A stretch of DNA of 63,794 nucleotides, the filler included, from Octopus bimaculoides (lineage: Eukaryota): the NCBI RefSeq assembly GCF_001194135.2. It is 5 parts of 5 records of this genome, joined end to end, with 100 filler letters (N's around TTAATTAATTAA, not from the genome) between each part and the next. Parts side by side here need not be neighbours in the genome. Positions count along the whole stretch, not along the records: positions 1 to 14,704 come from NC_068988.1; 4 more parts are not named here. The stretch is one strand, 5' to 3'. Shown in pieces: positions 1 through 52,077 of the stretch; position 1 is the first letter of the stretch; the number at the start of each line of letters is the position of its first letter. The notes beneath the pieces are model-generated. The model was not told where the DNA came from and did not search any database. It saw only the letters and a program-made list of their open reading frames with translations. Both the position numbers and the translations under genes were made by a program.

Positions 1-34
<34 letters not shown>

Positions 35-249
35 CAAATATTGATCATAGAACAAATATCAAATTGGAGTCAACGACTTCATATAAACACCATACCTCAA
101 ACATTTGGTCATATATAAATATCACCATGGTTCTTAAACATATAAAAATATACATATACATAAGAACATAGAAGGTAAAAATATATATGCGAATAAAATG
201 CAAATATATAGAATGGCCTATCAGAAAGGTAAATATAAACGACTGGATG

Positions 250-650
250 TGTGGATGTGTGGCAAGAGGCTTGCTTCCCAAATACATGGTTCCGGGTTTA
301 GTTTCATTGTGTGCCACCTTGGGCAGATGCATTTTACTATAGCCTTGGGCCTATCAAAGCTTTGTTAGTGTATTTGGTTGACGGAAACTAAAAGAATCTT
401 GTATATGTATATATGTATATGTGTGTGACTTTGTGTCTGTTCGTCCCCTCAGTATCGTTTGACAACCGATGACGATGTCTTTACGTCTACGTAATCTAGT
501 GGTTCGTCTAATGAGACCGACAGAATAAGTACTAGGCTTACGGAGAATAAACCCTGGGGTCGATTTCTCCGACTGAAATCCGTTTAAGGTGGTGCTCAAG
601 CATGGCTGCAGTAAAATGACTGAATCAAGTAAAAGAAACGAGTAAAAGAA
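250..650 (+). mobile_element. tRNA-derived SINE, family A (internal TA/TG microsatellite), near full length
   Basis: A-box-like GTGGATGTGTGGC and B-box-like GGTTTAGTTTC head; body matches copies at 3293-3571 and 46450-46973; internal TA/TG tract about 403-425; tail GACTGAATCAAGTAAAAG. Confidence 0.85.
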
Positions 651-927
651 TATATATATATATATATATACATCAAGTGTAGACAAGAAAGGGAGAAAAA
701 GAAAACAAAAAATATTACTACAAAATAAATGGAAGAGGGATGTTGATAGCAAGAGGCTGTTAGATGAAAATTAGATTACATAAAGTTTAAAGCGAGAAAT
801 GTGTACTAGAAAGAAGAAAGGAAGAATATAGACAGGAGAAATTGTGTGGGAGGGCTTTATAGATATGATGTGACCTATTCAGTAATGATATTAAAAGTCT
901 GTCATCACAATAATTTTAAGGTTATAG

Positions 928-1900
928 GTCAACCAGGTGCTTTGTTACATACATTTATATCTAGAGTATGTTGTCTCAGTTTACATTGTATACGTTGTAT
1001 TATTCTCATTCAGATCTTCTTCCGAGGTATAGGTTATAGATTTGTTGCAAATGAAGTTGTCACTCAGTGGAGTTGGGGCGGTGAATTCAAAAGGTCGAAG
1101 CATATGTTTTTAGTGTTTAGTTTATATTGTTTAGGTTTTTGTTTCTCTCGTATTGTGCGAAAGTGTGCTTAATTGTATGCAAGCATCTGGGTAGTCTCTC
1201 TGAGAATATATTTATAATCCTATATTTCGTCAACAATATAGACAGCAATTCATCGAAACATAACTGACATTTCCGGGGTAGGGTATTATAGAGACTCTCG
1301 TGTCTAATTATTGATAAGGGCAGGTCGAGTTTGACCTTCACTTTAATGAGTCACCTGATGAAATCAGCCAGTGATGTTGCGTGCCGTTTATGGATCCTTC
1401 GAATGCTGGAGGTGTGATTTCGATATCTATATTTGAAAATATCGACCGATCATCCGCTATACACATACGGGAATCCCCTAGTATTTACAGTGCATGTGTA
1501 TACTACATTACGGCTCTTACATTAGTTACCCAGAGGACATTTATATTGGTCTTTGCATTAGCATTGGTTGCCACTTATTTTATTAGCATGTTTACAGCCG
1601 GTGCTATGTTCATTTGTGCTAGTTGTTAACCTATTATCATATCTATTATTTCTGAGTGTGTTTGTGCTGTTGTTTGAGTAGCTGACTATCACGTGTTAGA
1701 AGGTTGCTATAGTTCTCGTTGAGGATATGGTTTATAGGTAGGTTAGTGTTGTTCAAGTCATTGTGACTGGTATAGTTATTACTTCTGGGAGTTTTTGTGT
1801 TGTTGTTAGAGTTCTAGTGACTATCGCAGGATAACTCGAAACGATCGGTATACAAAATAAAGATTTCTACTAATTCCATCTTCTTTTTACTCAATCCAAT
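928..1900 (-). mobile_element. Penelope-like retroelement remnant: GIY-YIG endonuclease C-terminus plus 3' UTR
   Basis: Minus strand about 1570-1117 reads C*CKDQYKCPLGN*CKSRNVVYTCTV...YVYSG*...FKYRYRNHTSS...ATSLADFI...RKCQLCFDELLSIL...INIFSERLPRCLH. This gives the VVY/YxG, R...H and CxLC...N...CxH motifs of EN+ PLEs, with several stops. Confidence 0.85.
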
Positions 1901-2588
1901 ATTATCTCAGATAACTGCGAAATTACTGACGTAGCTCCAGAGGAAATATAACTACAGATGACACCAGGTAGTCCAAAATATTACATACATACATATATAC
2001 ATACATGCAATCATACAGACATGTGTGTATGTGTGTGGGGGGTAGGAAAAAATTGGGAGTACTTTCCAAGGTTTGGCTTCCTCGACCTCATGAGAGGGAT
2101 GGTCAATGGTTTGATGATAGCGACTAAACCGAAAGCTAGTAATCACTGTCAACATGTTACGTGTAAAAGAAAATTAATCATCTACTATAAAGTACTTTAA
2201 TGTTCAATTATTCCTATATATACTACATGCATATAAAAGCAATATACACACATATATCTGTTTTTATGCGTCTATATGTGTCCACGTGAGTGGTCAACGT
2301 TATATATAAAAATATATTTTAATCCCCTGAGATCGCAGATATTGTTTCTGAATCTCTTTGATTCTTTAAATGTGCTAGTTTCCTGGTAATAAATCGATAT
2401 TAATTAATATATGATTGTTTACCCTATGTTTTTTATTGAATTAACCATTACCAAGTTCTCAAACTGGATATATGCGACGCAGTAAATATTTTTTTTCTGC
2501 AGACATATTCCCGGAACAATTTAGGTCTTAGTAGACACAAGATGTGATCTATTTCTAGCACATTAAGTGTCCACCTGAGTGGTCAACG

Positions 2589-2628
<40 letters not shown>

Positions 2629-3140
2629 NNNNNNNNNNNNNNNNNNNNNNNNNNNNNNNNNNNNNNNNNNNNNNNNNNNNNNNNNNNNNNNNNNNNNNNN
2701 NNNNNNNNNNNNNNNNNNNNNNNNNNNNNNNNNNNNNNNNNNNNNNNNNNNNNNNNNNNNNNNNNNNNNNNNNNNNNNNNNNNNNNNNNNNNNNNNNNNN
2801 NNNNNNNNNNNNNNNNNNNNNNNNNNNNNNNNNNNNNNNNNNNNNNNNNNNNNNNNNNNNNNNNNNNNNNNNNNNNNNNNNNNNNNNNNNNNNNNNNNNN
2901 NNNNNNNNNNNNNNNNNNNNNNNNNNNNNNNNNNNNNNNNNNNNNNNNNNNNNNNNNNNNNNNNNNNNNNNNNNNNNNNNNNNNNNNNNNNNNNNNNNNN
3001 NNNNNNNNNNNNNNNNNNNNNNNNNNNNNNNNNNNNNNNNNNNNNNNNNNNNNNNNNNNNNNNNNNNNNNNNNNNNNNNNNNNNNNNNNNNNNNNNNNNN
3101 NNNNNNNNNNNNNNNNNNNNNNNNNNNNNNNNNNNNNNNN

Positions 3141-3203
<63 letters not shown>

Positions 3204-3292
3204 ATATAGAGATTTGAGAGGAGGAAATCGGGTGTACCTTCGAAGTTTCGGTTTGCTCGACAACAAGAGACGAGACTATCATCAGTCTCATG

Positions 3293-3571
3293 ACAGTGTG
3301 GTTGTGTGGAATGAAACTTGCGTCCGAGCCAAATGGTTCCAGGTCCAGTCCCACTGCGTGGCACCTTGGACAGATGACTTTTCCTATAGCTGCAGCCAAC
3401 CAAAGCCTTGTGAATGGAATTGGTTGACGAAAACTGAAAGAAGCCTGTCGGACATATATGTGTATGTGTCTGTGTTTGCCCCCACCGTCATCGCTTCACA
3501 ACCGATGTTGGTGTGTTTACGTCCCCCCTAAATTAGCGATTCGGCAAAAGTACTCGAAAGAATAATTACTG
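3293..3571 (+). mobile_element. SINE family A, 3'-truncated
   Basis: Head GTGGTTGTGTGG...GGTCCAGTCCCACTGCGTGGCACCTTGG; same body as 250-650. Confidence 0.85.
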
Positions 3572-3950
3572 GCCAGGTGCTTTGTTATATACATTTATAT
3601 CTAGAGTATGTTGTCTCAGTTTACATTGTATACGTTGTATTATTCTCATTCGGTTCTTCCGACGTATAGATTTCAGGTTTGCTGCGAATTAAGTTGTCTC
3701 CCAGTGGAGTTGGGGCGGTGGATTCAAAAGGTCGGAGTGCATGTTTTTAGTGTTTAGTTTGCATTGGTTAGATTTGTGTTTCTATCATTTTTGTTTCTAT
3801 CATGTGAAAGTGTGCTTAATTGCATGGATGCATCTGGGTAGCCTCTCTGAGAATATATTTATGTTCCTAATTGTCGTCAACAATACAGACAGCGATTCCT
3901 CGGAATTTAACTGGCATTTTGGGAATAGGGTGTTATGGAGACGCGCTTTT
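3572..3950 (-). repeat. Second copy of the Penelope-like 3' end seen at 932-1330
   Basis: CCAGGTGCTTTGTTA(C/T)ATACATTTATATCTAGAGTATGTTGTCTCAGTTTACATTGTATACG... aligns directly with 932-1330. Confidence 0.85.
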
Positions 3951-5519
3951 TTCTAATCAGACTTCAATCATACGCTTTATCTTACCTTCAAAATGTTTCA
4001 TTGCATAACACTTTGCTTCTACCATATTGTGCCTACATTATTGTATCAACATTAATTTCTCATATTTATAGAGGAGATTTTTATCATCACTTTAAACAAA
4101 ATTATTGCATTACTAAGCAAACCGAGAGCCATTTCTTTTTAGTCATTCGACCTACAAAAAATATCAGTAAGCTCCTTCGAATAATTTCATTTTTATCAAA
4201 TCTAGTTTATTGGAGATTGTAGTCTTAGATATAAGAAAATGGTGAACATCCACTACTGAGATACCTTACCATCTTGGATTACAAGGAGATAAACAACAAC
4301 TGACACTTCATTGACCTTGCATAGTTGAAAAGCAAATTTAAATCTAGTGGGTGCTAATCTACATGTATGATCAATAACCTAAAAGCCTAATGTGTTTCTC
4401 GACTCTACAAATTTCTAACTATAGGAGGCAGTATATGTATCTAAAAAATATGTGTACCTTCAATTTGTGCCCGTAGAATACTTGTGCTATTTAATTGTTG
4501 CTGCTGTTGTTAGTTTGATTTTAATGTGCGTTTTCTGTTTAAGAAGCGATTTAGGTCGTATTTTCTGTCATTTGTGGAAGGTTTCGCTTACTATAATTTC
4601 TGATTCACAGTGTCACTGTCTCCTATTTTGGCCTTTTCCACTTCTACTATCATTTCCTCGCTCACTGTAGTTTACTGGTCTCGGGTCACCTCCACTCAAC
4701 CATACAAGATTCAATAAAACCCTCTCTTCTTTCTATCCATATCTTCTTTATAAACCATTCATCAATACGCCATATTATTCCCTCCAACAATTACTGCTCT
4801 CTGGGACTGCTTATCAGCACGTCTATTTTTCATAACCGTCAGGATCGAACGCTAATCAACTTGGCATTGGACGAGTTTTTGTACAGAATATTGAGATAGT
4901 AGGACAAAATTTATACATAACTGTTCATATTAAATATGTACATGACAATGGTACATTCATGTTAAATCTTTAAACTATTACAAATTTTCGCGAAAAGTGC
5001 CTCATGAAATATATGTATATTCCGAAGGCAATTATACTGTCAAAGTTTAAAACTTAGCAGATTCATAGTTTGAGATTTAAGGATTTCGTCCATAGGCTAA
5101 CCAAGCATCTCTCTCAGAATATGTACCATACAGCTTAAAGATATGTTTTTTTTTTATTTTTACTCGACATTTTTGCTCAACTGAACACGCTTTGCCTTAA
5201 ATGATAACACACAAATAATGTCATTGCTGGTTTCCAAATGTCCAATATGTTACAGGATGCTTTTTGTTCATTTCTATAACCAACAAATTTTCAAGGAATG
5301 ATTACAATACATGATATCCAGTGCCTGAAAAATAAGATTAAAACTGAATTCGGGGTCGTCTCGGCAAGAAAGGCTTTGAGTATATTTTGTGATATTAACC
5401 TTGTTTAATGACTATAAAAGAAGCGTGTATATTTTATGCAAAACAAAATTGAACCGACAAGCATGTTTTTACATGCTAATGGAATTTATTAATCGATATC
5501 GATTTTAAAATAAATTATG

Positions 5520-5936
5520 TCACATCTGCCAACATAGCACCCAACTCCTTTGTAGATACACACGTCCAGAGTAGCAGAAGTGTGTATGTTTAGAAAATTA
5601 AAGGTACACAGCAAGCAAATGTGTGTGGAATGTTGTTATTCCCCCCACCCCACCCCGGATACTATCCATCAACAAGTGTTATATATAGTTTCCCTGAGAA
5701 TTGGTGCTGTGCCACAGTATAAATGCGTCGTTCACGCAATCGGTGCGCCGTTACAACAATCGCTAACTGATGCAGCTATCGTTACAGCACTGCAACAGCC
5801 GTTCGTTGCGGTTGTAATTGGAAGTAATGTTCAAGCAAAGCATAATTTTGCATGCCTGTCAAACCCAACATTTCTACAGCACGCTGGGCATTTAAAGCCA
5901 TTTTTCGATGAAAGCTCTGAATTGCAACAACTATTA
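5520..5936 (-). pseudogene. Decayed exon of a di-cysteine-repeat (galaxin/usherin-like) protein
   Basis: Perfect branch point TACTAAC (5959-5953) and TTTTCAG acceptor (AG 5938-5937). Reads NSCCNSELSSKNGFKCPACCRNVGFDRHAKLCFA*TLLPITTATNGCCSAVTIAASVSDCCNGAPIA*TTHLYCGTAPILRETIYNTC*, then after frameshifts ACCVP and KHTHFCYSGRVYLQRSWVLCW. CC-x11-CC spacing recurs. Confidence 0.65.
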
Positions 5937-6199
5937 CTGAAAATGTTATACGGTTAGTAATTAAAAATATCTAAATGCAAAAATAAAAGAATAGAAAAGA
6001 ATACTGATTTTGGTTAGATTTAAGAATAAGAAAGGGATACTGATAATGGTAGGAGTCATTCATGCATTCTTGCTCAAACGCACATTCACACATATTCACA
6101 CATACACACGTTTACACAAGCACATTCACACCCATATGTATATTATATGCACGTATGTGTGTGTATATATATATATATATATGTGTGTATGTGTGTGTG

Positions 6200-6208
6200 C
6201 GGGTATTC

Positions 6209-6251
<43 letters not shown>

Positions 6252-6929
6252 CGCGTGTGTGCGTGTGTGTGCGTGTGAATCGTACAAAGACAACGATTAC
6301 GATGTTGTTACATAACTTTCTTCAAACACACATTCGTTCCGAGGAACTATACATCACTATATACTGTTTTGAACATATAAGTATACGTAATATCATGTAA
6401 GTAAACAATCGATGGAGGAAACAGATTGCCTTATTCTAGACTGACGAGTATATTAGAAGGTAAAATATTTAGTTAATTAGTTAATAATTGTATGGATGTA
6501 AATAAATTTACTTGTACAAGTCAATGTGCATATGGACGAAATAATTTCTCACGTCTTTCGAAATGATCGCAAAATTGAATAAAGTTATATAACATCACTA
6601 TTTGCCGTCTGATTTTTGTTATAGACTATGATAACTGCACCAGCCAGTAGACTGGTGACGTCCTCAGATTTATAGCTTGTATAGAATGCCTAGTAGATTA
6701 AATTTATACGGATTCTCATTTTTCTGACTTGACATTCTGTCAGCTATGTCTTTGCATGGATTACTGGGGTATAACATATTTCCTGGAAAATATACGTATA
6801 TTTATATGTTCAAAACAGCATATAGTGATGTATAGTTCCTCGGAACAAATGTGTGCTTGAAGAAAGTTATGTAACAACATCGTCATCGTTGTCTTTATAC
6901 GACTCACACACACGCACACGCGCACACAT

Positions 6930-6964
<35 letters not shown>

Positions 6965-6965
6965 T
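6200..6965. repeat. Foldback (inverted repeat) with about 190-bp arms including (TG)n/(CA)n
   Basis: 6278-6390 (AAAGACAACGATTACGATGTTGTTACATAACTTTCTTCAA...GAGGAACTATACATCACTATA) is the near-exact reverse complement of about 6785-6905. Confidence 0.85.
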
Positions 6966-7029
6966 GATTAATCGCTGACAAAAACATTCAATTTTTTTCT
7001 CCGTGTTTTTCTCCTTGTTTTCTCTGTAT

Positions 7030-7067
7030 TCTTTCTGTTGAAGAGCGTAGCTCGAAACGTTAAAGAC
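7030..7067 (+). ncRNA. Minimal hammerhead-ribozyme-like cassette with non-canonical core
   Basis: TCTTT-CTGTTGA-A-GAGC-GTA-GCTC-GAAAC-GTT^AAAGA: helix I TCTTT/AAAGA, helix II GAGC/GCTC, palindromic ACGT helix III. Core is CUGUUGA instead of CUGANGA. Part of a repeat (about 7000-7155) with a second copy at 36290-36420. Confidence 0.5.
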
Positions 7068-7869
7068 TTTCTGTATTCCCGAGCGTTAAACTAATACATC
7101 CTTTTGTTGTCTACATCACTTGTCCTCGTCTGTTGTTTTTTTCGTAAATTCTCCCATGTATGTATGTATGTATGTATTATGTATGTATGTATGTATATAT
7201 CTATGTATATGTATGTATGTATGTATGTATGTATGCATGTATGTATGTATGTATGTATGTATGTATGTATGTATGTATGTATGTATGTATGTGAGTATGC
7301 ATGTATAAATATTAATGGCTGTTTCTGTTATAATAAGCAGTTTAACATTAAACAATTTCATTTATATTGTAGTATTAATCCATACATTTATTTGACAGAA
7401 TACAAATTTATTACGTTTTCACAAGAATAGCATTGATAGTATCTGAAAGTTCCGGCTTGCTACCCCGTTACAGGTCTGCGGAACATTTGTGTTCATCTTG
7501 GATTTATCTAGTGTAAGCTGAGTTCTGGTGAATGATAAATTAGGTTCTATGGTAGGTTGTGATGGCAAAATTTTGTGGAGAATTTTAGTTCATTAAATCT
7601 GGATTGTGTTCTTGTTTAGAATTTATTTATGCTTACGGAACTTTGTAGACATATGTGTATATCTAGGTGTGTCATCTTCAAGAGTGCTATGTATTGGAGA
7701 ATTATACATCTTTTCTATCATATGAAATTCCAAAACTCGTTTTTTTTTTTGTATATATGTTTTAGAAACCTTAGATATCATAGTTCTGCCCATCGAATAC
7801 ATTTTTATTAAAAATCAATAAAAGTACAAACTCCATTCACAAGAAGGCTTTTATCTTTAATACTTTCAG

Positions 7870-7992
7870 TTCGCTTCATCGACCCGTATGTGGAATATAT
7901 GGAAAGAAGTTGTACAAGAGTGTCAGTCTTTGGCAGAGATTGTTCAACACTTGATTTAATGAAAATCGATTCGGTGCACAGACCCATCGCAT
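7870..7992 (-). pseudogene. Further decayed exon of the galaxin-like gene
   Basis: Acceptor TTTCTTTTGTATAAGTGTCTTAG; reads a|CDGSVHRIDFH*IKC*; downstream FDGQNYD remnant. 3' boundary not resolved. Confidence 0.4.
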
Positions 7993-8430
7993 CTAAGACA
8001 CTTATACAAAAGAAATGCATGTTGGAATTTTATATACAGGAACATTTANNNNNNNNNNNNNNNNNNNNNNNNNNNNNNNNNNNNNNNNNNNNNNNNNNNN
8101 NNNNNNNNNNNNNNNNNNNNNNNNNNNNNNNNNNNNNNNNNNNNNNNNNNNNNNNNNNNNNNNNNNNNNNNNNNNNNNNNNNNNNNNNNNNNNNNNNNNN
8201 NNNNNNNNNNNNNNNNNNNNNNNNNNNNNNNNNNNNNNNNNNNNNNNNNNNNNNNNNNNNNNNNNNNNNNNNNNNNNNNNNNNNNNNNNNNNNNNNNNNN
8301 NNNNNNNNNNNNNNNNNNNNNNNNNNNNNNNNNNNNNNNNNNNNNNNNNNNNNNNNNNNNNNNNNNNNNNNNNNNNNNNNNNNNNNNNNNNNNNNNNNNN
8401 NNNNNNNNNNNNNNNNNNNNNNNNNNNNNN

Positions 8431-8575
8431 CGTGACTTAGTGGTTAGGGTGTCAGCATCATGATCGAAAGATTGTGGTTTCGATTCCTGGACCGGGCGAC
8501 GCGCTGTGTTCTTGAGCAAAACACTTCATTTCACGTTGCTCCAGTCCACTGTGGCAAAAATGAGTAACGCTGCGG
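8431..8575 (+). mobile_element. tRNA-derived SINE, family C (CORE-like central segment)
   Basis: GTGACTTAGTGGTTAG...GGTTTCGATTCC head; GTGTTCTTGAGCAAAACACTTCATTTCACGTTGCTCCAGTCCAC body; related copies at 38190-38345 (-) and 42078-42190. Confidence 0.8.
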
Positions 8576-8578
8576 CAA

Positions 8579-8815
8579 GGCGGCGAGCTGGCAGAAACGT
8601 TAGCGCGCCGGGCGAAATGCTTAGAGGTATTTCGTCTGCCGTTACGTTCTGAGTTCAAATTCCGCCGAGGTCGACTTTGCCTTTCATCCTTTCGGAGTCG
8701 ATAAATTAAGTACCAGCTAGGCACTGGGGTCGATGTTATCGGCTTAATCCCTTTGTCTGTCCTTGTTTTTCCCCCTCTATGTTTAGCCCTTTGTGGGCCA
8801 TAAAGAAATAAGAAA
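8579..8815 (+). mobile_element. tRNA-derived SINE, family B, full length with long tail
   Basis: GGCGAGCTGGCAGAAACGTTAG...GAGTTCAAATTCCGCCGAGGTCGAC...GGGGTCGATG...CCCCTCTATGTTTAGCCC...ATAAAGAAATAAG; many copies in the window. Confidence 0.9.
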
Positions 8816-9199
8816 GATGGCCTTTCTTTCTGTTTTCCTGCCTTTTGATTGAGATGATAAATATTAATATTTTGTTTTAAATACAACTGTACTTTTCCAC
8901 TTTAATAAAACAAATATCAAGCAAACATGATCAAAAAAATATCTCATATAAATATAAGGCGAATTTCTATCTATCCGTCAACGACAATCTGAAAAATGTA
9001 AAAATGGTCGTGGGAAGAAAAAGCGAGTAAGAAAAATGGACGGACGCTGGTAGCTGCTATGACTCTTTGAAGTATACCGCCGCAAGTCGGCATTTTCAAC
9101 TTGATTCTTTTTTCTTAAATGGGGAAATGACTATTTCATTTGTAATCTTTGTCATCGTAATCAAAGAGCAGGAAACAGACAAACTTTTAGTTTTAGTAT

Positions 9200-9408
9200 A
9201 AGATAGATAGATAGATAGATAGATAGATACATACATACATACATACATACATACGTACGTACGTACGTACGTACGTACGTATGTACGTACATACATACAT
9301 ACATACATACGTACATACGTACATACATACACACATACATACGTACGTACGTACGTACATACATACATACATACATACATACATACATACATACATACAT
9401 ACATACAT
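9200..9408. repeat. Compound tetranucleotide microsatellite (GATA/CATA/CGTA)
   Basis: Directly visible; abuts the presumed LINE 3' end. Confidence 0.95.
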
Positions 9409-9527
9409 AAGTTTCTTTATTAGTAACACAGGGCCGAACAGAGAGGGGACAAAATACAATATAGCGCTTTTCTTTTCAAAAATAAAAAAAAGAAAGGAGA
9501 AAAATAAAATTCTGACCAAAAGGGATC

Positions 9528-9589
<62 letters not shown>

Positions 9590-11909
9590 NNNNNNNNNNN
9601 NNNNNNNNNNNNNNNNNNNNNNNNNNNNNNNNNNNNNNNNNNNNNNNNNNNNNNNNNNNNNNNNNNNNNNNNNNNNNNNNNNNNNNNNNNNNNNNNNNNN
9701 NNNNNNNNNNNNNNNNNNNNNNNNNNNNNNNNNNNNNNNNNNNNNNNNNNNNNNNNNNNNNNNNNNNNNNNNNNNNNNNNNNNNNNNNNNNNNNNNNNNN
9801 NNNNNNNNNNNNNNNNNNNNNNNNNNNNNNNNNNNNNNNNNNNNNNNNNNNNNNNNNNNNNNNNNNNNNNNNNNNNNNNNNNNNNNNNNNNNNNNNNNNN
9901 NNNNNNNNNNNNNNNNNNNNNNNNNNNNNNNNNNNNNNNNNNNNNNNNNNNTGACAGCAGCCGTTCGGCATAAGCCCTCAGGTCCGAAATGGTTGAACAC
10001 TGAACGAGTGCGTGCAGAACGGTTTCGTCGCTCTGACCGCATCTCAGACAAGTCGGTTCGGTGTGTGTGGAATCGTGCCTGTAGAGCTTATCTCGAACGG
10101 GTAATGCTTTTCGATGGCACTGCCAGGCCAGGGATCTTTGGTGAGTGTCCATAGGTCCCGGTCCGAAAGTTGTCCTGAACAGACGGGTCAGGTGTTCCTC
10201 GTCGACGCCCAGATTCTGTCCAAGAACGTTGTTGCAACTTCCCTCCACTAATCCTCTATAGAACGCCTTTGTGGAGTTGAAGTCGCCCAAGTTTGGTCCC
10301 AGACGGCAGAGTTGCGTGAGAGCAAGGCGACACTCACCGTGCCATTCGTCTAGCCTCGATCTCCATTTGTTCCACGACTGCAGTTCGGCCAAAGAGACGA
10401 GCTGCGAGAAAGCGCGCTGCACAAACAGTGACCACAGCTGTTCACTGTCGTCTGTGAAGCGCCGGAGATGTCGCAGTCTCAGTCCATGTCTGCGCAACAT
10501 CAACCACGGCATGCCTAGCCCTACATTTAGTGAGTGTTGACAGCAAATGGATCACCTAACCATCGGAACGCTTCTCTTCCACAAAAAGCGGAAGAGTATG
10601 CGTTCCAGTTTGGTAATGGTAGTATCGGGACAAGGCACGACGGTCAGACGGTAATCGATGACGGATGCGATGTACGCGTTCGCCACCTGCACCCGACCTT
10701 TTAGAGATAGCTTCCTCTCAGCCGATTGTTGGATGAGAGTGAGTACTCTAGTTGTTATCTCGCCCCAGTTCTTCTCCATTTGGAGGTCGGGTCGGGACCG
10801 AACCAGACTCCGAGCAATTTAACCGGTCTGTCGGTCCAGCGTCCCACAATAGAGACGCTGTTGGAAGGCATGGGCTTCCTTATCCAGATGCCGAGTCGCA
10901 AGCCCAGTGACTTTTCCCGCTTAATTTTTGCTCCCGTTACCGCTTCGTATTCTTTTAGTGTCTCGCCGACCAGGTCAATATGCCTGTGGCTCGACACTAT
11001 GACGGTAACATCGTCCGCGTATGAAGACACGCTCCTCCCGCATCCCACCTCTTGCGGGTTTCCCCTTAGCGTCGCCAGCTTCTGCAGTAGCGGCTCAAGA
11101 GCCAATGCGTACAGAAGCGACGAGAGGGGGCATCCTTGACGAACCGAACGCGTGATGTTAAATACTCTGGACAGATGACCATTTACGCGGACTACCAAGC
11201 GGATTCCGTTGTATAAGGCACCGATCCAACCACGGAAGATGGAACCGAAACCAGCCGCTCTAAGGATAGCCTCCAAGTAGTGATGGTCTACCCTATCGAA
11301 AGCTTTTGAGTGATCCAAATTTATCAGCGCTCCACCCATGTCAGGTTCCTAAACTACCCTGTCTATGATGTAGTGCATTAGATGGAGGTTGTCATGGATA
11401 CTCCTACTCAGCAGGGCGCACGTTTGCGTCTTGTTGATCCGCTTCTCGATAACAAGCGCCAACCTCTCGGCTAACGCATTGGCCAAAATTTTCAAGTCTG
11501 AGTTGAGCAGAGTGATGGGCCTGAAGTTATCTATGACGTTCCCCTTGTTTGGATGTTTCTTTAGCAGTGCCACCGCTCCTCGCTTTACAGAGTCGGGGAT
11601 ATTCCCGTTTTGCTGCCAGTTGCAGTAAGCAGCTGCCAAGACTCCTCCAAACAAGTCTGGCATATGACAATAAAGTTCGTAGGGCAGACCATTCAAGCCT
11701 GGTGACTTGTCTCCCTGCTGTAATGGATATTTCACAACACTCTGCCTCTCTTGCCGAGAGTGATGGCAGATTATGCAGGTAGGCGCTAAAGTCCACTCTG
11801 CGTTCTAACCCACCAATTGTCCCAAACAGTTGGGAAAAGTGTTGTTGAAAGGCCTCACACATCGTTTCAGGCTTGAGTAATTCGCACTCCTGTTCATCTG
11901 TCAGGGACC
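9405..11909 (-). mobile_element. L1/Tx1-clade non-LTR retrotransposon (RT plus C-terminal CCHC), disrupted and truncated by gaps
   Basis: KSPGLNGLPYELY, NFRPITLLNSDLKILA, LINLDHSKAFDRVDH, RSVRQGCPLSSLLY, SYADDV, KLLGVWFG, LSLKGRVQVAN, CLRCGQSDETVLHALVQC; split across several ORFs by frameshifts and stops. The 9405-9530 3' UTR assignment crosses an N gap. Confidence 0.9.
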
Positions 11910-12781
11910 NNNNNNNNNNNNNNNNNNNNNNNNNNNNNNNNNNNNNNNNNNNNNNNNNNNNNNNNNNNNNNNNNNNNNNNNNNNNNNNNNNNNNNNNNNN
12001 NNNNNNNNNNNNNNNNNNNNNNNNNNNNNNNNNNNNNNNNNNNNNNNNNNNNNNNNNNNNNNNNNNNNNNNNNNNNNNNNNNNNNNNNNNNNNNNNNNNN
12101 NNNNNNNNNNNNNNNNNNNNNNNNNNNNNNNNNNNNNNNNNNNNNNNNNNNNNNNNNNNNNNNNNNNNNNNNNNNNNNNNNNNNNNNNNNNNNNNNNNNN
12201 NNNNNNNNNNNNNNNNNNNNNNNNNNNNNNNNNNNNNNNNNNNNNNNNNNNNNNNNNNNNNNNNNNNNNNNNNNNNNNNNNNNNNNNNNNNNNNNNNNNN
12301 NNNNNNNNNNNNNNNGATACAAAATATTCTACTTTCTTACTTTGAAGGTACGCATATAAGCAAATAGCTGACACTAAACAGTTAATCTGCATTATCACCC
12401 AAATGTACACACTAACTTTCAGAGTACTCTACATTCTCAACGCAAACAACAGTAGCTATAAATTTATCGCACCTATAAGATACAAACACGTGAAGACTGA
12501 GTGTTCATTCACATTTGCATATAAAAACACGCAGCCATATTTCAATCGAATATTTCCAGGCATTCAAATGCAACGTTAATACAATTTAGCATGAACGTGC
12601 ATATATAATTCAAGTAGTCATGAAAAAAGAGAACAGAAAACGTTAATTAAAAGTTAAGTGTATATGCCGGTGCTTCCTAGACTGTAATTTCGACTAGTGA
12701 GGAGAAATGTATATAAGCATACATAAAAACTTAAACACACATACATACATACATACATACATACATACATACGTATGTATG

Positions 12782-12815
<34 letters not shown>

Positions 12816-13017
12816 GGTGTGTATGAGTGTGTGTGTATGTGTTTGTGTATACATACATACATACATACAAACAAAAATACGCTATTGTTGGTGTTGAAAT
12901 TCCAATAAAGGTGCCCTTGGATCTAGGTTAGAAACTGGTTCTTTCTCTATTGGCCAGAAATCTTGAAATAAACTGAATAATGACATACATAACATTCGGT
13001 ATCAATCTTGTACTCAC

Positions 13018-13117
13018 TTCAGGTAGGCTTACAACTAGATTTGGTACTAGTTTGGATGAGCAATATTCTATTTGGGACTTGATAAAATATGAACCTATTT
13101 CCAATACTGCTTATAAC
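13018..13117 (-). pseudogene. Putative exon 2 of the galaxin-like gene (broken)
   Basis: Acceptor ACAATTCTAG, donor AA|GTGAGT. Starts GT, completing the T| phase-1 codon of exon 1 to Cys. In-frame stops; a shifted frame gives SYFIKSQIEYCSSKLVP (degenerate CC repeat). Confidence 0.45.
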
Positions 13118-13480
13118 CTAGAATTGTATTTTGTAAATATGTATTCATATGATAACGTGAATACATATTTATTTAATATGGCGCCAGTAAAATTAAGGTG
13201 CAAAAAATGTATTCCTCTTACAATATATTTCAAATAATACTAATGTGATATTCAAAGTGAAATGGCGGTATCTATGACTTGAATTTTACTTTATATTAAT
13301 CTATATAAACATTACCTATAAGTACTTATAATTCACTTTAAACTCGAATGAAATATATCGATCTTCATTCGTGATATACTAGCAACTTTGAAAATATAGA
13401 AGACCTAATATTTTTTGTTATATGTACTTGCAGAATGAATAACAAAAAAAGTTACATATAGAATTGTAAAAACGACTTAC

Positions 13481-13574
13481 AAGTTGTTTGCGGAATATAA
13501 TGTGGATGTAAGGCAGTTGTTGATCCAATGATTGCAAGCAGAGCAGATGCAATAGCGATTAAAATTTTGAACAT
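13481..13574 (-). CDS. First coding exon with signal peptide (secreted protein; likely start of the galaxin-like gene)
   Basis: ATG at 13574-13572; MFKILIAIASALLAIIGSTTA-LHPHYIPQTT followed by T|GTAAGT perfect donor (94 nt, phase 1); classical n/h/c signal-peptide pattern. Too short for the ORF track. Confidence 0.7.
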
Positions 13575-13630
13575 GATCTTCCCTGTTCTCTTCTCGATTC
13601 CAGATTCACTTTGATAAGAACGGGAAAACA

Positions 13631-13638
13631 TTTATATA
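13631..13638 (-). promoter_or_regulatory. Candidate TATA box
   Basis: TATATAAA on the minus strand, 56 nt upstream of the signal-peptide ATG; leaves room for a start site about 25-30 nt downstream and a short 5' UTR. Confidence 0.4.
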
Positions 13639-13912: not shown

Positions 13913-14275
13913 ATGCGGTGAGCTGGTAAAATCGTTGGAAAGCCAGACAAAATGTTTTGTAGTATTTCGCTCTTTTTCTCCATTCTGAATTCAACTACTG
14001 CCGAGCTGCAATTTGCCTTTCGTCTTTTTGCGTTCGAGAAATTAAATACAAGTGAAACAATGGGGTCGACGTAATCAAGTAGTCTCCTCCCCCAAAACAT
14101 CCAGCCTTGTGCTTTTAGAAGAAAAAAATATTATTATTATTAAAGTAGCGAGCTGGCAGAATCGTTACCTAGCTGGGAGAAATGTTTAGCGGTATTTCGT
14201 TTGTCGCTACGTTCTGAGTTCAAGTTACGCCGAAGTCAACTTTGCCTTTCATTCTTTCGGGGTCAATAACTCAAG
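13913..14275 (+). mobile_element. Two adjacent family-B SINE copies (old 13913-14110; younger, truncated 14146-14275)
   Basis: Both carry GAGCTGG...AATCGTT heads and TCTGA(G/A)TTCAA boxes. Confidence 0.75.
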
Positions 14276-14748
14276 TACGGTGATTTCATGTGCTGAAGCA
14301 CATTTTGTTGTGTTTGAGGGAAAATATTCTATTTTAATGCCTTATTAATTAACACACTCACCGGTTTGATTTCCACTGATTTAATTATGTATTCATTTAT
14401 CTATTTTCTAAAATTTCCATTGCTTCTTGTAAACACTTCAATAGTTGTTGTTGACTCTATCCGTTATAGGAGCTGCTTTCTTTTTGTTTGTTTGTTTGTG
14501 CACGTGTGTGTGCGTTAGTCTGCATGTATATACACATATGTATATAGCTATATATGTATGCATGTATGTACGTACGTATATATGTTTGCATATATATGTA
14601 TGTATGCGTGTATGCACGTTTGTATGTATCTATTCTACATATTCATGTGTTTGTGTGTGCATATTTGTGTGTATGTCTACCTATCTGTTTATCTACGTGC
14701 CAATNNNNNNNNNNNNNNNNNNNNNNNNNNNNNNNNNNNNNNNNNNNN

Positions 14749-47039: not shown

Positions 47040-47834
47040 AGACGTTGAGTTGTGGCCTTCATACCATTGAGCAATCTATGAAAACTGCGTATTCATACTT
47101 CCGCATTCTTCTGATAAAAAGTGCACCAAACTGATCATATCTCTGGCCAATCTGACGTTATTTGAGGGAGATGCACTGGTTTTCTTGAGCATCTCCTAAC
47201 CAAGAATGAGTCATGGGTTCATTATTTTGAACCAGAGACAATGAGACAGTCATTCTTCCTCATGTACGCCAAAGAAGGCAAAGGTCATTTCATCTGCGGG
47301 GAAATTGATGGCCTTAGTTTTTAGGAATGCAAAAGGCAGTGTTTGCTGACTATCTTTAAAAGAGCCACACAATCAATGGAGAGTTCTATGCCAACTTGCT
47401 GAGACAATTATCAATAACTTTCAATACCAAACGTCCAGGAAACCTGACTAAAGGGATTTGGTTTCATCAGGACAATGGTCCAGCACACATGTCCTTGGTT
47501 TCAATTCAATGCTGTGGGTGACTTTGACTTTGAACTTGTTGATAAGCAACTCTTTACTTCTGATTTGGCTCCATGTGGCTTTCGTCTATTCCCCAACATT
47601 GAAAAATGGACTTTTGGGAACCAGTATCGCTGTGATGTTCAACAAATCTGCTCTTGATGATTTGTTTTACCGACATAATGGCAGCTTATTCACTAATGGG
47701 ATTCAAGCAATGCAACAGAGATGGAAGAAGTGCGTGGACCACATCGATGTCTATGCTACCAAATAAAAACCTCATATCACCACATTCCATGGGAGTATCT
47801 TGGTCGGCCTATGGAATTTTCCACCGACCCTCGT
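47040..47834 (+). mobile_element. Mariner (irritans/Himar-like) 3' two-thirds with right TIR
   Basis: LLTKNESWVHYFEPET...SAGKLMA...TINGEFYANLL...KRPG...FHQDNGPAH...SDLAPCGFRLFP...QQRWKKCV; end CCTATGGAATTTTCCACCGACCCTCGT. Confidence 0.88.
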
Positions 47835-48059
47835 GTGTTTGTGTGTGTATGTGTGTGTGTACAATATCGTACAAATATATATAAATACATACCTGCATAC
47901 ATGAACACGCCTATATATTTATACATGTGTGTATATACACAATTTTGAATTTCTCTTGCAAACAATTTGCTCTATAATTGCGTAGTGAAACTCTTGCAGT
48001 TATCTTTTTATTGAGGCAGATTCATATTCTTTTCTACTCTAGCCACGAGGCCCATAATT

Positions 48060-48240
48060 TTTTTGAGGGGTGGCAAACGATTTCATCGACCCCAGTATGC
48101 AACTGGTACTTAATATATCGACCCCGAAAGGATGAAAGGGAAATCCGACTTCGGCGTAATTTGAACTCAGAGCGTAAAGACAGACAAAATACCGCTAAGC
48201 ATTTCGCCCTGCAAGCTAACGTTTCTCCCAACACGCCGAC
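48060..48240 (-). mobile_element. SINE family B
   Basis: Reverse complement of the family-B head and body (GAAACGTTAGC...CTGAGTTCAAATT...GGGGTCGATATATTAAGTACCAG). Confidence 0.85.
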
Positions 48241-48720
48241 TGAAGGCAGATTCACATTGCCTATAAATGTACTCAATAGTCGCAGTTCCATCCCGTTTGT
48301 GTTAAATTATATTTTTAATTATATTTTCGAAGTTTTTTTCCCTCGCGCATACCTGTGATCTCGATAATTTAAAATTATTAAGCATTTTTTGTTTTAAGTT
48401 AAATCCCACTTCTATGTTAAATGTGTAATATGTTTTCATGTTACACCTTTGATTTCATCGGGTTCTGCGACAAACATAGTTAACACAAATCTAAAAAAAC
48501 ACATATATATATAGGCATATAATGTGCATAACTTAGTACACACATTATTGGGAAACGTACACTTTCATGGTTTATATTCAAAAGTTATAAAAATAATTGG
48601 AATCGAAATTTTCTGTTTTGATTTTATATTATGGCAGTTCACAAACACATACTCATACACACGTGCACGCAAACACATGCATACACTATTACACTCATTC
48701 TCTCTCTTTAGTAATCGCTC

Positions 48721-48760
<40 letters not shown>

Positions 48761-49296
48761 TCTTCTAATCTCTCTCTCACAAAAGTTTACTGTTTTTCAC
48801 ACTCTCTCTCTCACACACACAACCTTTTTCCTCTGGCACATTCTTTCACTCTCTCTGTTTGCCACTCTCTCACTCTCGTTCTCCCTCTCTCTCTCACTTA
48901 CACGACCTTTTCCTCTGTCACATTCTTTCCCTCTCTCTGTTTGTCACTCTCTCACTCTCGTTCTCCTTCTCTCTCCCACTTACGCACACACTCAAACACA
49001 CACACACAATTAACTTTATTTGCTGTGTAATGAAACGAATAAGTAAATGCTTAGAAAAAAAAAAAATTATTTTATTTTAATTTAATTTAAGGTAATTATT
49101 TATATATTAATCAATTTATTTATTTATTAAAATTTAGTATTCATTTTATCGTGTAGTATAAGGAAGAAGAATTTGACAAAATTTAAATAAAAATCGTTTT
49201 ATGTATTCTCTAACTACTGATATTACGCAAGTTGACAAGAGTGTACACTTCCAAAGTTACTCTTCATGTGACGGGTAACAATCTTTTATGTATGTG

Positions 49297-49327
<31 letters not shown>

Positions 49328-49521
49328 ACGTAAATGTCGAACGATGAAAATGAGTGCTCAACACCGCAATGGTGGATATGATAATTTTATTTGTGAATGA
49401 AGGCTACCATTGTTTTCATGTTACGAAAAGTAGGAAAATATTTTCCGAGCCGATCTCATGGAGAAAGTTGTTCGCCTCCATTTTAGAGAGCAATCTCGTG
49501 TAGTTCACGGGCGTACATATA

Positions 49522-49580
<59 letters not shown>

Positions 49581-49724
49581 ATGCAAACATACACATTCGA
49601 ACACACAAACACGCATATATATATTTATATATATGCATATATACATACATACATAATACGTACACACATATACAAATAGACATGTGTGTGCATGTGTATG
49701 GATGCATGAATGTATGTATAATTA

Positions 49725-50850
49725 TAAGCACGTATACATGTGTAATATATGTCGGGGGTAGTGCGTGTGTGTGTGTGCGTATTTGTGTGTGTGCGTGTGC
49801 GTGCGTGTGTGTGTGCGCTTGGATAAGTATGGAAGCATACACTTATAAATATACTATTTTGCAACTGAAGGATAGGTAACTATTGTTTGGCAAGGTGGAA
49901 GAGCCGAGCACATTCTAAGGAGAGAGTTCATTACGCGGAAACGAAGTTTCGTATTCCTTGGAGGATAATGGTTTCCAGCATTTTGTTTTAGCATTCGTTT
50001 TATTGATATGAAGATATGAAATCTAAAATTGATTCCTTTTTATCCAAAATCATATACAGCCAAATAATTCTATCTTTTTGTCATTTGTCTTGAAATAATT
50101 AATAACTTAAAATAGGCCAGCTAAATTTAGAATCAGATATTAGAAACAATGAACAGAGTTTTATGGGGGATATTCAAAATTAAGTTTTAATATACAATGT
50201 AATACAGAAAGATCAACACTAGTGCAACGCTGAAGAATATGAAGAGGCTTCGTACTCATTTGTATTATTACGGCTTATAGCATTCATTTGAAAAATGTCG
50301 CCTATTTTATATTATTAATCTATAATAATAAATGTGTGCGTGTGTGTGTGTGTGTGTGGATTTGTGAAATTGTGTCTGTCCGTTTGGGACACCTGCATCT
50401 CAAGATGCCCTCAGATATCAAAGGAGAGATGAATGACATTCGCTTCGTTAATTTTACGTCGAGATCAGAACTTTAGGACAAACTGGTCAACAGTTTGAAT
50501 TCATCTTGGGACTGAAAAAATAGAATGATTGCATTACAGAAATAATTTTCATTCGTCCTCAACCTCTGATCAAACACCACTTGAGCATATAATCATTATA
50601 GATGTATTAGAGTGATGCTATTTAATCCCCCTCAATTTTGGGTCGCTGGCTCAATTAGCCCTCCGTAGGATCTACTTTAAGCGCACGCGCTGAGTGTATT
50701 TTTTAAGATAGTAGTAGATAAAGTACGATGACCGAATATTAAATCTCTTAGTATCATCGACCATCGATTTCTCAGAGTTGAATCTGCATAAGATTCGTCA
50801 TTACAACTAAACTATCCTTTAATTTTGTGTCACAGTAGGTACTTCTTCTG
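49725..50850 (+). repeat. Copy 1 of a diverged about 1-kb unit (interrupted by about 395 bp at 50331-50724)
   Basis: Shares ordered anchors (TATACTATTTTGC, CCAAAAT(C/A)AT, AAATAATTAATAA, GAT(C/G/A)AACACT(A/T)GTG, TTAAATC(T/A)CTTA, TCTCAGAG) with 53405-54400 and 57130-58130. Confidence 0.75.
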
Positions 50851-50906
50851 ATTATTATTATTATTATTAATCTTATTATTTTTATTATTATTATTATTAT
50901 TATTAT

Positions 50907-50940
<34 letters not shown>

Positions 50941-50954
50941 TATCATTATTACCA

Positions 50955-51550: not shown

Positions 51551-51558
51551 TTATTATA

Positions 51559-51614
<56 letters not shown>

Positions 51615-51616
51615 CA

Positions 51617-51678
<62 letters not shown>

Positions 51679-52021
51679 GTTATTATTATTATTATTATTA
51701 TTATTAAAGACGAAGAGCGCGATTCCATTGTAAGATATCTTATTAGTTGAACGATATTTCAACAGTACGTCTGTCTTTGTCAAGTTCAAAATAAGAAGTG
51801 ATAAAAATTCAAAATTACAGAAATTTAAACGTAAAGTATGAACGAGAGCAAGGCGACAGAAAGAAAAGGAAAGAAAAAGAGAGAAAGAAGAATATTTAAT
51901 CAAACAGTTTTGTATAAATTTTCCTGTCATCTTATTCATGCCTACAGGGCGTGATGTTAATAACCTGCTCTTCGCCTTGACTGTTTATATTTGTGAAGAG
52001 TTACGTCAATCCTTTTAGAAA

Positions 52022-52077
<56 letters not shown>

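What the first reader, a model, noticed from the sequence alone, without database searches (positions are those of the whole stretch)
5520..13638. Hidden, decayed galaxin-like secreted-protein gene absent from the ORF track
Seen: on the minus strand a TATA box (13638-13631), an intact signal-peptide exon (13574-13481, perfect GTAAGT donor), a phase-matched exon 2 (13117-13018), and exons at 7992 and 5936 (TACTAAC branch point). Their translations show repeated CC-x11-CC units, with many Cys pairs degraded to CF, YC, CY, CW or C*, plus stops and frameshifts. Established: such di-cysteine repeats typify coral skeletal galaxin, the bobtail squid light-organ galaxin EsGal1 and the Cys-rich part of usherin. 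Inference: this is a unitary or duplicated galaxin-like pseudogene. If unitary, it could be a relic of a shell-matrix or symbiotic-organ function that octopuses lack. A LINE, SINEs and a foldback sit in its introns.
Basis: partly seen in the sequence, partly recalled or inferred. Interest (0 to 1): 0.75.

Follow-up and report, generated by a model that had tools for sequence, protein, structure and literature searches.

The report
Dead spare exon inside live galaxin-2
The window is the front part of an annotated Octopus bimaculoides galaxin-2 gene, and its long intron carries a decayed spare copy of the protein-coding exon; this is an ordinary by-product of a tandem gene cluster, not a hidden lost gene.

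Summary
The window is Octopus bimaculoides chromosome CM046608.1 (100% identity, same N gaps).

**Confirmed**
- The signal-peptide exon (13574-13481, GTAAGT donor) is real.
- The galaxin-like di-cysteine sequence near 5936 is real: Pfam Galaxin_repeat 30.6 bits, phmmer E 1e-13.

**Wrong**
- The gene model is wrong. Octopus galaxins have two coding exons.
- The "TACTAAC branch point/acceptor" lies inside former coding sequence.

**What is there**
- The true dead exon is 5970-5511. It has 6 stops, deletions of 28, 25 and 2 nt, and 4 of 9 Cys pairs lost.
- Exon 1 is not dead. It matches the first coding exon of annotated galaxin-2 isoform X2 (XP_014786332) exactly.
- That isoform splices to an intact exon 27.7 kb downstream, outside the window.
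- The dead exon is a skipped relic of a second, alternative terminal exon type. That type is still intact and annotated in O. sinensis.
- A sister relic sharing three lesions lies in the neighbouring galaxin gene.
- Octopuses keep intact galaxins, so the "lost function" idea fails.

Interest is low.

The parts
13631..13638 (-). TATA box TATATAAA of the galaxin-2 (isoform X2) promoter
   Evidence: Sequence read. ATATATAAATG is invariant in 8 paralogous and orthologous promoters. The annotated upstream ATG (13631-13629) overlaps it, so that ATG is probably not in the mRNA (inference).
13481..13574 (-). Coding part of exon 1: the signal peptide plus 10 residues, ending in phase 1. This is a live exon of galaxin-2 isoform X2.
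   Evidence: 100% tblastn match to P0005/P0012 (XP_014786332.2/.1) at L002 48848-48997. The signal-peptide character is judged by eye only: n-, h- and c-regions, TTA|LH.
13475..13480 (-). Splice donor GTAAGT
   Evidence: TGTAAG is conserved in 7 of 8 first-exon copies.
5973..13474 (-). Upstream part of the 27.7-kb intron. It holds the LINE, a SINE-like copy, the foldback, microsatellites and three assembly gaps.
   Evidence: Collinear at 81-90% with the orthologous O. sinensis intron. No galaxin-like coding sequence.
9952..11909 (-). LINE-type retrotransposon fragment (reverse transcriptase plus zf-RVT). It is cut by the gaps at 9590-9951 and 11910-12315.
   Evidence: Pfam RVT_1 at 9.2e-20 and zf-RVT at 1.8e-7. 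Present at the orthologous site in O. sinensis at 86% identity.
6218..6964 (.). Foldback: 172-nt inverted arms at 6218-6389 and 6793-6964, 91% complementary
8577..8810 (.). SINE-like interspersed repeat. A second copy lies at 14148-14278, upstream of the promoter.
   Evidence: Searches show many copies in both species' clusters. No tRNA or Rfam match.
5971..5972 (-). Retained acceptor AG (tttgcatttag|AT) of the dead exon. Its phase matches exon 1.
   Evidence: Alignments with the O. sinensis X1 exon
5511..5970 (-). Dead 'X1-type' terminal galaxin exon. It should encode the whole mature protein of about 170 aa. Lesions (codons numbered from the first full codon of the exon):
- C2F, 5965-5963
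- Q5* TAA, 5956-5954
- C44F, 5839-5837
- G46* TGA, 5833-5831
- R79* TGA, 5734-5732
- C84Y, 5719-5717
- C100* TGA, 5671-5669
- 28-nt deletion after 5659
- 25-nt deletion after 5647
- E144* TAA, 5592-5590
- 2-nt deletion at 5588
- W168* TGA, 5522-5520
   Evidence: Codon-wise alignment to O. sinensis XP_036361252.1 exon 2. Pfam Galaxin_repeat 30.6 bits. phmmer E 1.1e-13.
5485..5490 (-). AATAAA about 20 nt after the ancestral stop codon, possibly the old polyadenylation signal
   Evidence: Sequence. Its function is inferred only.
1..5510 (-). Continuation of the same intron. The live exon 2 (E2c, L002 76711-77249) lies about 14.2 kb beyond window position 1. The segment contains a 360-nt internal direct repeat (933-1295 and 3573-3942).
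   Evidence: No protein-family match in its ORFs.

Best explanation
**What the window is**
- The window is the 5' portion of the Octopus bimaculoides galaxin-2 gene.
- A TATA-box promoter drives a short first exon that encodes the signal peptide. Transcription initiation here is inferred.
- According to two independent annotations, this exon is spliced across a roughly 27.7-kb intron to a single large exon outside the window. That exon encodes the whole mature di-cysteine-repeat protein.

**The dead exon**
- 7.5 kb into that intron lies a dead copy of a second kind of terminal exon, here called 'X1-type'.
- Octopus galaxin units were originally built as one signal-peptide exon followed by two alternative mature-protein exons, X1-type and then X2-type. 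In O. sinensis unit 3 both are still intact and are annotated as isoforms X1 and X2.
- In the unit held by the window, the X1-type exon was disabled by stops, frameshifting deletions and loss of Cys pairs. It is now skipped. It is a non-functional relic, and the gene around it is alive.
- The relic probably died before the duplication that produced the neighbouring galaxin unit. That unit's intron holds a sister relic with three of the same lesions.
- At the strictly orthologous site in O. sinensis the exon has been removed altogether.
For: **Identity of the locus**
- The window is 100% identical to CM046608.1 (L002), with the same gaps.
- Exon 1 is 100% identical to XP_014786332.2/.1 and A0A0L8FW63. 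The rest of that protein maps at 100% to L002 76713-77246.

**Gene structure**
- All homologues have two coding exons.

**The dead exon**
- It aligns codon by codon with the intact O. sinensis X1 exon, including the acceptor.
- It carries 6 stops, 3 deletions and 4 lost Cys pairs.
- Pfam Galaxin_repeat scores fall in a gradient: about 70-80 bits for intact copies, 51.9 for the sister relic and 30.6 for the window copy.
- The sister relic at L003 14949-15433 shares loss of C2, Q5* and C84Y.

**Orthology**
- The orthologous O. sinensis gene (XP_029639690.2) has the same exon 1, LINE and exon 2 layout. It has no X1-type exon and essentially no assembly gaps.

**Exon 1 constraint**
- The TATA box, 5'UTR, ATG and donor are conserved in 8 copies.
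- Exon 1c differs from exon 1b by 4 synonymous and 4 conservative changes in 93 nt, read.
Against: - No RNA data could be examined. Use of exon 1 and skipping of the relic rest on gene models from NCBI Gnomon and from the original genome annotation.
- Intactness of a 93-nt exon is only weak evidence by itself. I estimate a roughly 15% chance of it surviving neutrally over the decay time of the relic.
- The O. bimaculoides cluster is heavily gapped. A further first exon between the relic and E2c cannot be strictly excluded.
- dN/dS between the two relics is 0.38, not the roughly 1 expected if both had been dead since before their duplication.
Confidence: 0.85

Rival explanations
1. One reading: a single hidden gene of four or more exons (13574, 13117, 7992, 5936) that has decayed as a whole. 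It would be a unitary pseudogene marking a galaxin function lost in octopuses.
For: The promoter, signal-peptide exon and decayed di-Cys sequence are on one strand and in order.
Against: - Homologues have only two coding exons.
- The two middle 'exons' have no homology. One has 5 stops, and its AG is not conserved.
- Exon 1 is part of an annotated intact gene.
- Intact galaxins lie in the same cluster and are described in the literature.
Confidence: 0.02
2. The whole unit in the window (exon 1c plus the dead exon) is a dead duplicate gene. On this view the annotated isoform X2, which joins exon 1c to E2c, is a modelling artefact caused by near-identical first exons and a gapped assembly.
For: - Exon 1b and exon 1c are about 91% identical, so homology-based models could pick either.
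- Five N gaps lie between the relic and E2c.
- Survival of a 93-nt ORF by chance is not very unlikely.
Against: - The essentially gap-free O. sinensis orthologue has no other first exon between the equivalent exon 1 and exon 2.
- Two annotation pipelines give the same model.
- The TATA box, 5'UTR, ATG and donor are all intact, and amino-acid changes are conservative.
Confidence: 0.08
3. The relic exon is still spliced and polyadenylated as a decoy terminal exon. It would divert some transcripts to a 36-residue product and so tune galaxin-2 output.
For: The acceptor AG, the long pyrimidine tract and an AATAAA just past the old stop codon are all retained.
Against: - No expression evidence.
- These short signals are expected to persist for some time by chance.
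- O. sinensis has deleted the exon at the orthologous site without apparent replacement.
Confidence: 0.05
4. The stops and frameshifts are assembly or sequencing errors, and the exon is really intact.
For: The assembly is short-read based and gapped.
Against: - There are 12 separate lesions, including 55 nt of deletions, inside one uninterrupted contig (3141-8048).
- Three lesions recur in the independent sister copy.
- The sequence is unchanged in assembly version .2.
Confidence: 0.01

Closest known systems
Octopus bimaculoides galaxin-2, isoform X2 (XP_014786332.2; earlier XP_014786332.1 / UniProt A0A0L8FW63)
   Same: The window's promoter and exon 1 are this gene's first coding exon (100% identity). 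The whole window lies inside the gene's span.
   Different: - The gene's mature-protein exon (E2c) is outside the window and is of the X2 type.
- The dead exon in the window is not part of any model.
- The 19-residue N-terminal extension in version .2 starts at an ATG that overlaps the TATA box. It is probably an artefact.
Octopus sinensis galaxin-2-like isoform X1 (XP_036361252.1)
   Same: - Its exon 2 is the closest intact DNA relative of the dead exon: 73% DNA identity and 54% amino-acid identity over comparable codons.
- It has the same acceptor and the same 3' flank.
- It shares its first exon with an X2-type isoform, so it shows the ancestral three-part unit.
   Different: - It is intact, with 9 of 9 Cys pairs.
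- It lies in a different unit of the cluster (unit 3). That unit is orthologous to O. bimaculoides unit D, so this exon is a paralogue of the dead exon, not its orthologue.
Sister relic in the intron of O. bimaculoides galaxin (XP_014767985.1), L003 14949-15433
   Same: - Same X1-type exon in the same position, between exon 1 and the live exon 2.
- 78% DNA identity.
- Shares loss of C2, Q5* and C84Y.
   Different: - Less decayed: 2 stops, deletions of 13 and 12 nt, and Pfam 51.9 bits.
- It has its own private lesions.
Euprymna scolopes galaxins EsGal1-10 and coral galaxin (Pfam PF24748 Galaxin_repeat)
   Same: Secreted proteins with a signal peptide and tandem di-cysteine repeats. EsGal peptides are antimicrobial in symbiotic organs (PMC12773714).
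   Different: Only distant sequence similarity; a coral protein scores E 8e-19 against the octopus profile. Nothing here links the octopus genes to biomineralisation or to a light organ.

Membership tests
Galaxin family (Pfam PF24748 Galaxin_repeat) | Match to the family profile at or above the curated cut-off | tested here: met
   The dead exon scores 28.4 bits over 100 aa and 30.6 bits for the frame-corrected reading, against a cut-off of 28. Intact cluster members score 70-80 bits.
Galaxin family (Pfam PF24748 Galaxin_repeat) | Regularly spaced di-cysteine (CC) pairs in tandem repeats | tested here: inconclusive
   Five of the 9 ancestral CC pairs remain. The others are CF, YC, C* and one deleted. 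The pattern is recognisable but broken.
Galaxin family (Pfam PF24748 Galaxin_repeat) | N-terminal signal peptide | tested here: inconclusive
   Exon 1 encodes MFK-ILIAIASALLAIIG-STTA|LH, a typical n/h/c layout by eye. It is homologous to the N-termini of all 8 cluster members. No signal-peptide predictor was available.
Galaxin family (Pfam PF24748 Galaxin_repeat) | Open reading frame able to give the protein | tested here: not met
   The window's repeat-encoding exon has 6 in-frame stops and deletions of 28, 25 and 2 nt. The live gene's repeat exon lies outside the window.
Unitary pseudogene | No functional paralogue in the same genome, with an intact orthologue in relatives | tested here: not met
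   - Intact galaxin exons E2a and E2c lie in the same cluster.
- The strictly orthologous O. sinensis site lacks the exon.
- The intact O. sinensis X1 exon is a paralogue.
Duplicated (unprocessed) pseudogene or pseudo-exon | Retains its genomic context (splice acceptor, flanks), lies in a tandem array with live copies, and carries disabling lesions | tested here: met
   - The acceptor and 3' flank are homologous to those of the intact X1 exon.
Usherin Cys-rich region | Laminin-type EGF or usherin-specific domains | not tested
   Pfam returned only Galaxin_repeat for the region. No dedicated comparison with usherin was made.

The most novel reading that the evidence does not exclude
Octopus galaxin genes were built as modules: one signal-peptide exon followed by two alternative exons, each encoding a complete and different mature protein. 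The X1-type alternative has been lost repeatedly: two relics in O. bimaculoides and outright removal in two O. sinensis units. The window's relic still has its acceptor, pyrimidine tract and AATAAA. It might therefore still act as a decoy terminal exon that truncates a share of galaxin-2 transcripts.
Probability: 0.1. Interest if true: 0.4.

Novelty: new member of a known kind. Interest (0 to 1): 0.2.

Why it matters
- **Annotation.** The finding places an unannotated dead exon inside an annotated immune and secretory gene. It corrects a plausible but wrong four-exon model. It also flags likely artefacts in public models: an N-terminal extension that starts inside the TATA box, and a 67-kb isoform X1 that spans mostly gaps.
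- **Biology.** The finding adds a small piece to the history of cephalopod galaxins, which are antimicrobial effectors in squid symbiotic organs. The cluster evolves by duplication of three-part units, with fast protein evolution and repeated loss of one exon type.
- **What it does not show.** It does not point to a lost shell-matrix or symbiosis function in octopuses.

Tried and rejected
- A word-indexed protein search with the 89-aa conceptual peptide found nothing. The exhaustive phmmer search was needed.
- Scanning whole translated frames against Pfam lost the galaxin hit, so that is not a usable way to look for further exons. tblastn with real octopus galaxins was used instead and found no further exon in the window.
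- The second phmmer hit, P0002 (553 aa, bacterial-looking, Gly/Ala-rich repeats), matches only a low-complexity stretch and was dismissed.
- P0004, an intact X1-type ORF known only from MetaClust, could not be placed on any contig. Its species remains unknown.
Values were relic against relic 0.38, relic against intact X1 0.41, and live paralogues 0.7-1.2.
- tRNA and Rfam scans of the window were empty.
- ORFs in 1-5954 have no credible family match.
- Selenocysteine read-through of the TGA codons was considered and dropped. The TGAs replace Gly, Arg, Cys and Trp codons, TAA stops and frameshifts are also present, and the sister copy lacks them.
Full report
**1. What the sequence shows**

On the minus strand, TATATAAA lies at 13638-13631. 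An ATG at 13574 opens a 31-codon reading frame, MFKILIAIASALLAIIGSTTALHPHYIPQTT. The frame ends in phase 1 at 13481 and is followed by GTAAGT.

Between about 5970 and 5510, one minus-strand frame reads ...PYNIFSNSCCNSELSSKNGFKCPACCRNVGFDRHAKLCFA*TLLPITTATNGCCSAVTIAASVSDCCNGAPIA*TTHLYCGTAPILRETIYNTC*.... CC dipeptides cluster there and nowhere else on that strand.

That peptide is a significant galaxin match:
- It hits Pfam PF24748 Galaxin_repeat at E 1.8e-6 and 28.4 bits, against a cut-off of 28.
- An exhaustive phmmer search of 1.84 billion representative proteins gives one real hit, at E 1.1e-13. The hit is galaxin-2-like isoform X2 of Octopus sinensis, XP_036361253.1.

The galaxin-like nature of this stretch is therefore real and well beyond chance.

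**2. Where the window comes from**

A profile of the octopus hits retrieved the other cluster members, and their loci were fetched.

The window is 100% identical to Octopus bimaculoides GCA_001194135.2, chromosome CM046608.1, and has the same N gaps. Window position w corresponds to L002 position 62479 - w. It lies wholly inside the span of the annotated gene 'galaxin-2'.

**3. The real gene structure**

Every octopus galaxin recovered has two coding exons: a short signal-peptide exon, and one large exon that encodes the whole mature protein.

Its first exon maps at 100% to window 13631/13574-13482. The remainder maps at 100% to L002 76713-77246. That position is 27.7 kb downstream and about 14.2 kb beyond the window's left end.

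Exon 1 is therefore not part of a dead gene. It is the first coding exon of a live, annotated one.

Across all eight first-exon copies of the two species, these features are conserved:
- The motif ATATATAAATG is invariant.
- The about 57-nt leader is conserved.
- The signal-peptide ATG is conserved.
- The TGTAAG donor is conserved in 7 of 8 copies.

**4. The dead exon**

DNA alignment with the intact O. sinensis 'X1' exon 2 (L001 22902-23393) shows homology beginning at a conserved acceptor. In the window this is tttag|AT, with AG at 5972-5971 and the exon starting at 5970, in phase with exon 1. Homology runs to the ancestral stop column at 5513-5511.

The window reads NY*PYNIFS where O. sinensis reads NHQPYNIFS.

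Read in the ancestral frame, with codons numbered from the first full codon of the exon, the window copy carries these lesions:

| Lesion | Window position |
|---|---|
| C2F | 5965-5963 |
| Q5* (TAA) | 5956-5954 |
| C44F | 5839-5837 |
| G46* (TGA) | 5833-5831 |
| R79* (TGA) | 5734-5732 |
| C84Y | 5719-5717 |
| C100* (TGA) | 5671-5669 |
| 28-nt deletion | after 5659 |
| 25-nt deletion | after 5647 |
| E144* (TAA) | 5592-5590 |
| 2-nt deletion | at 5588 |
| W168* (TGA) | 5522-5520 |

Five of the nine CC pairs survive. Pfam Galaxin_repeat scores form a decay series: 70-80 bits for intact proteins, 51.9 for the sister relic and 30.6 for the window copy.

**5.

'Exon 2' (13117-13018) has five in-frame stops and no counterpart in a two-exon family. 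Its AG is TAA in O. sinensis.

That region is 90% identical between the species, but so is the whole first 600 nt or so of the intron. The conservation therefore does not mark an exon.

The 'exon at 7992' has no family match. It differs from the orthologue by 9- and 2-nt indels. Both are intron.

**6. The gaps**

The essentially gap-free O. sinensis cluster is collinear with the window across all three gaps, in the same orientation:

| Window gap | Window flanks | O. sinensis merged-cluster positions | Interval compared |
|---|---|---|---|
| 11910-12315 | 11909 and 12358 | 41341 and 41037 | 303 nt in O. sinensis against 448 nt in the window |
| 9590-9951 | 9534 and 9952 | 43672 and 43257 | about 415 nt in both |
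| 8049-8430 | 8047 and 8881 | 45447 and 44200 | not compared |

Two of the gaps interrupt the LINE. None abuts a genuine exon. The corresponding O. sinensis sequence has no galaxin-like coding potential. Reading-frame continuity across the gaps is therefore irrelevant to the finding.

**7. Cluster context and history**

Cluster order in O. bimaculoides:
1. E1a, then relic psiA, then E2a. This is 'galaxin', XP_014767985.1.
2. E1b.
3. E1c, then relic psiC, then E2c. This is galaxin-2; E1c and psiC are in the window.
4. E1d.

Cluster order in O. sinensis:
1. Unit 1: E1, then E2.
2. Unit 2: E1, then E2.
3. An extra E1.
4. Unit 3: E1, then an intact X1-type exon, then an intact X2-type exon. These are annotated as isoforms X1 and X2.

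The exons fall into two types. X1-type comprises O. sinensis X1, psiA and psiC. X2-type comprises all the live O. bimaculoides exons and the rest. The repeating module is therefore one first exon plus two alternative mature-protein exons.

The two relics share loss of C2, Q5* and C84Y. Their flanks are about 80% identical, against about 85% for orthologous sequence between the species. The exon therefore probably died before the A/C duplication, and that duplication is older than the species split.

Consistent with this, the strict orthologue of the window is O. sinensis unit 2. It shares the same LINE at 86% identity and has no X1-type exon at all. The former 3' flank of that exon is present there but inverted, with the breakpoint about 15 nt past the old stop codon.

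The intact O. sinensis X1 exon belongs to unit 3, which is orthologous to O. bimaculoides unit D at 87%. It is thus a paralogue of the relic.

An intact X1-type ORF, P0004 (UPI000695361F), is 76% identical to O. sinensis X1. It may be the O. bimaculoides unit D exon, but it could not be placed.

**8. How it works**

Shown:
- The identity of exon 1 with the annotated transcript's first coding exon.
- The intact downstream exon.
- The lesions in the relic.

Inferred:
- Transcription starts about 30 nt after the TATA box, so ATG 13574 is the start codon.
- The signal-peptide exon is spliced past the relic to E2c, giving a secreted di-Cys-repeat protein of about 190 aa after cleavage.
- The relic contributes nothing.

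By analogy with Euprymna galaxins, which are antimicrobial peptides of epithelia that house bacteria, the live protein is likely an epithelial antimicrobial or matrix effector (PMC12773714; Heath-Heckman 2014, cited). This was not tested here.

**9. Caveats**

- No RNA evidence could be consulted.
- The O. bimaculoides cluster is more than 30% N. Isoform X1 (E1b to E2c over 67 kb) may be an artefact, and a hidden exon cannot be wholly excluded.
- NG86 dN/dS between the relics is 0.38, lower than between live paralogues at 0.7-1.2. This remains unexplained and makes dN/dS uninformative for this family.

**10. Verdict**

The thing is a dead duplicate terminal exon inside a live, known gene of a known family. 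This is a routine feature of a fast-evolving tandem cluster. Novelty is 'new member of a known kind', and interest is low at 0.2.

Noticed in passing
window 13629-13638 (and L002 9990-10003, L001 9990-10003): The upstream ATG used as CDS start in XP_014786332.2, XP_014786331.1 and XP_036361252.1/253.1 overlaps the invariant TATA box (TATATAAATG). The 19-residue N-terminal extension in these models is therefore probably an artefact. The older model (XP_014786332.1 / A0A0L8FW63) starts at the signal-peptide Met.
   Followed up: partly
window 252-5519 against merged O. sinensis cluster 47777-52253 (L004/L001): This 5-kb intronic segment is inverted between the two species. One breakpoint lies about 15 nt past the dead exon's old stop codon. 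O. sinensis has 364 nt where the window has the dead exon, a CA repeat and a 172-nt-arm foldback (5520-7005). The O. bimaculoides orientation looks ancestral, because the same exon-flank arrangement occurs in unit A and in O. sinensis unit 3.
   Followed up: partly
window 12920-13480: The first 600 nt or so of the intron is 85-92% identical to O. sinensis. That is as high as the promoter, and higher than the 3' half of exon 1 (69-73%). It may be an intronic regulatory region.
   Followed up: partly
window 9952-11909: The LINE fragment (RVT_1, zf-RVT) sits at the orthologous intron position in O. sinensis at 86% identity, so it is older than the species split. It still holds open stretches of 151-200 codons.
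   Followed up: partly
L003 14949-15433: A second, less decayed X1-type relic lies in the intron of O. bimaculoides 'galaxin' (XP_014767985.1). It shares the C2 loss, Q5* and C84Y with the window copy. dN/dS between the two relics is 0.38, which is unexpectedly low.
   Followed up: partly
L002 10001-48847 (between exon 1b and exon 1c): More than half of this 38-kb interval is N, with gaps of 8.2, 7.1 and 5.6 kb. XP_014790240.1 (partial galaxin-2, on a 1162-nt unplaced contig) could be a missing exon 2b. Isoform X1, which joins exon 1b to E2c over 67 kb, may be an assembly-driven artefact.
   Followed up: no
L002 76711-77249 against L003 27653-28171; L001 43230-43724: Live X2-type galaxin exons evolve very fast. 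NG86 dN/dS is 1.21 between the two O. bimaculoides paralogues and 0.73-0.81 against O. sinensis X2. Orthologous mature proteins are only about 67% identical. This fits an immune-effector family under relaxed or positive selection.
   Followed up: partly
window 8577-8810 and 14148-14278: A SINE-like element of about 130-230 nt has many copies in both species' galaxin clusters. It gives no tRNA or Rfam match.
   Followed up: partly
window 933-1295 and 3573-3942: A direct repeat of about 360 nt (83-97% identity) flanks the gap at 2629-3140. The whole 252-5519 segment looks internally duplicated and recurs in O. sinensis units 1 and 2.
   Followed up: no
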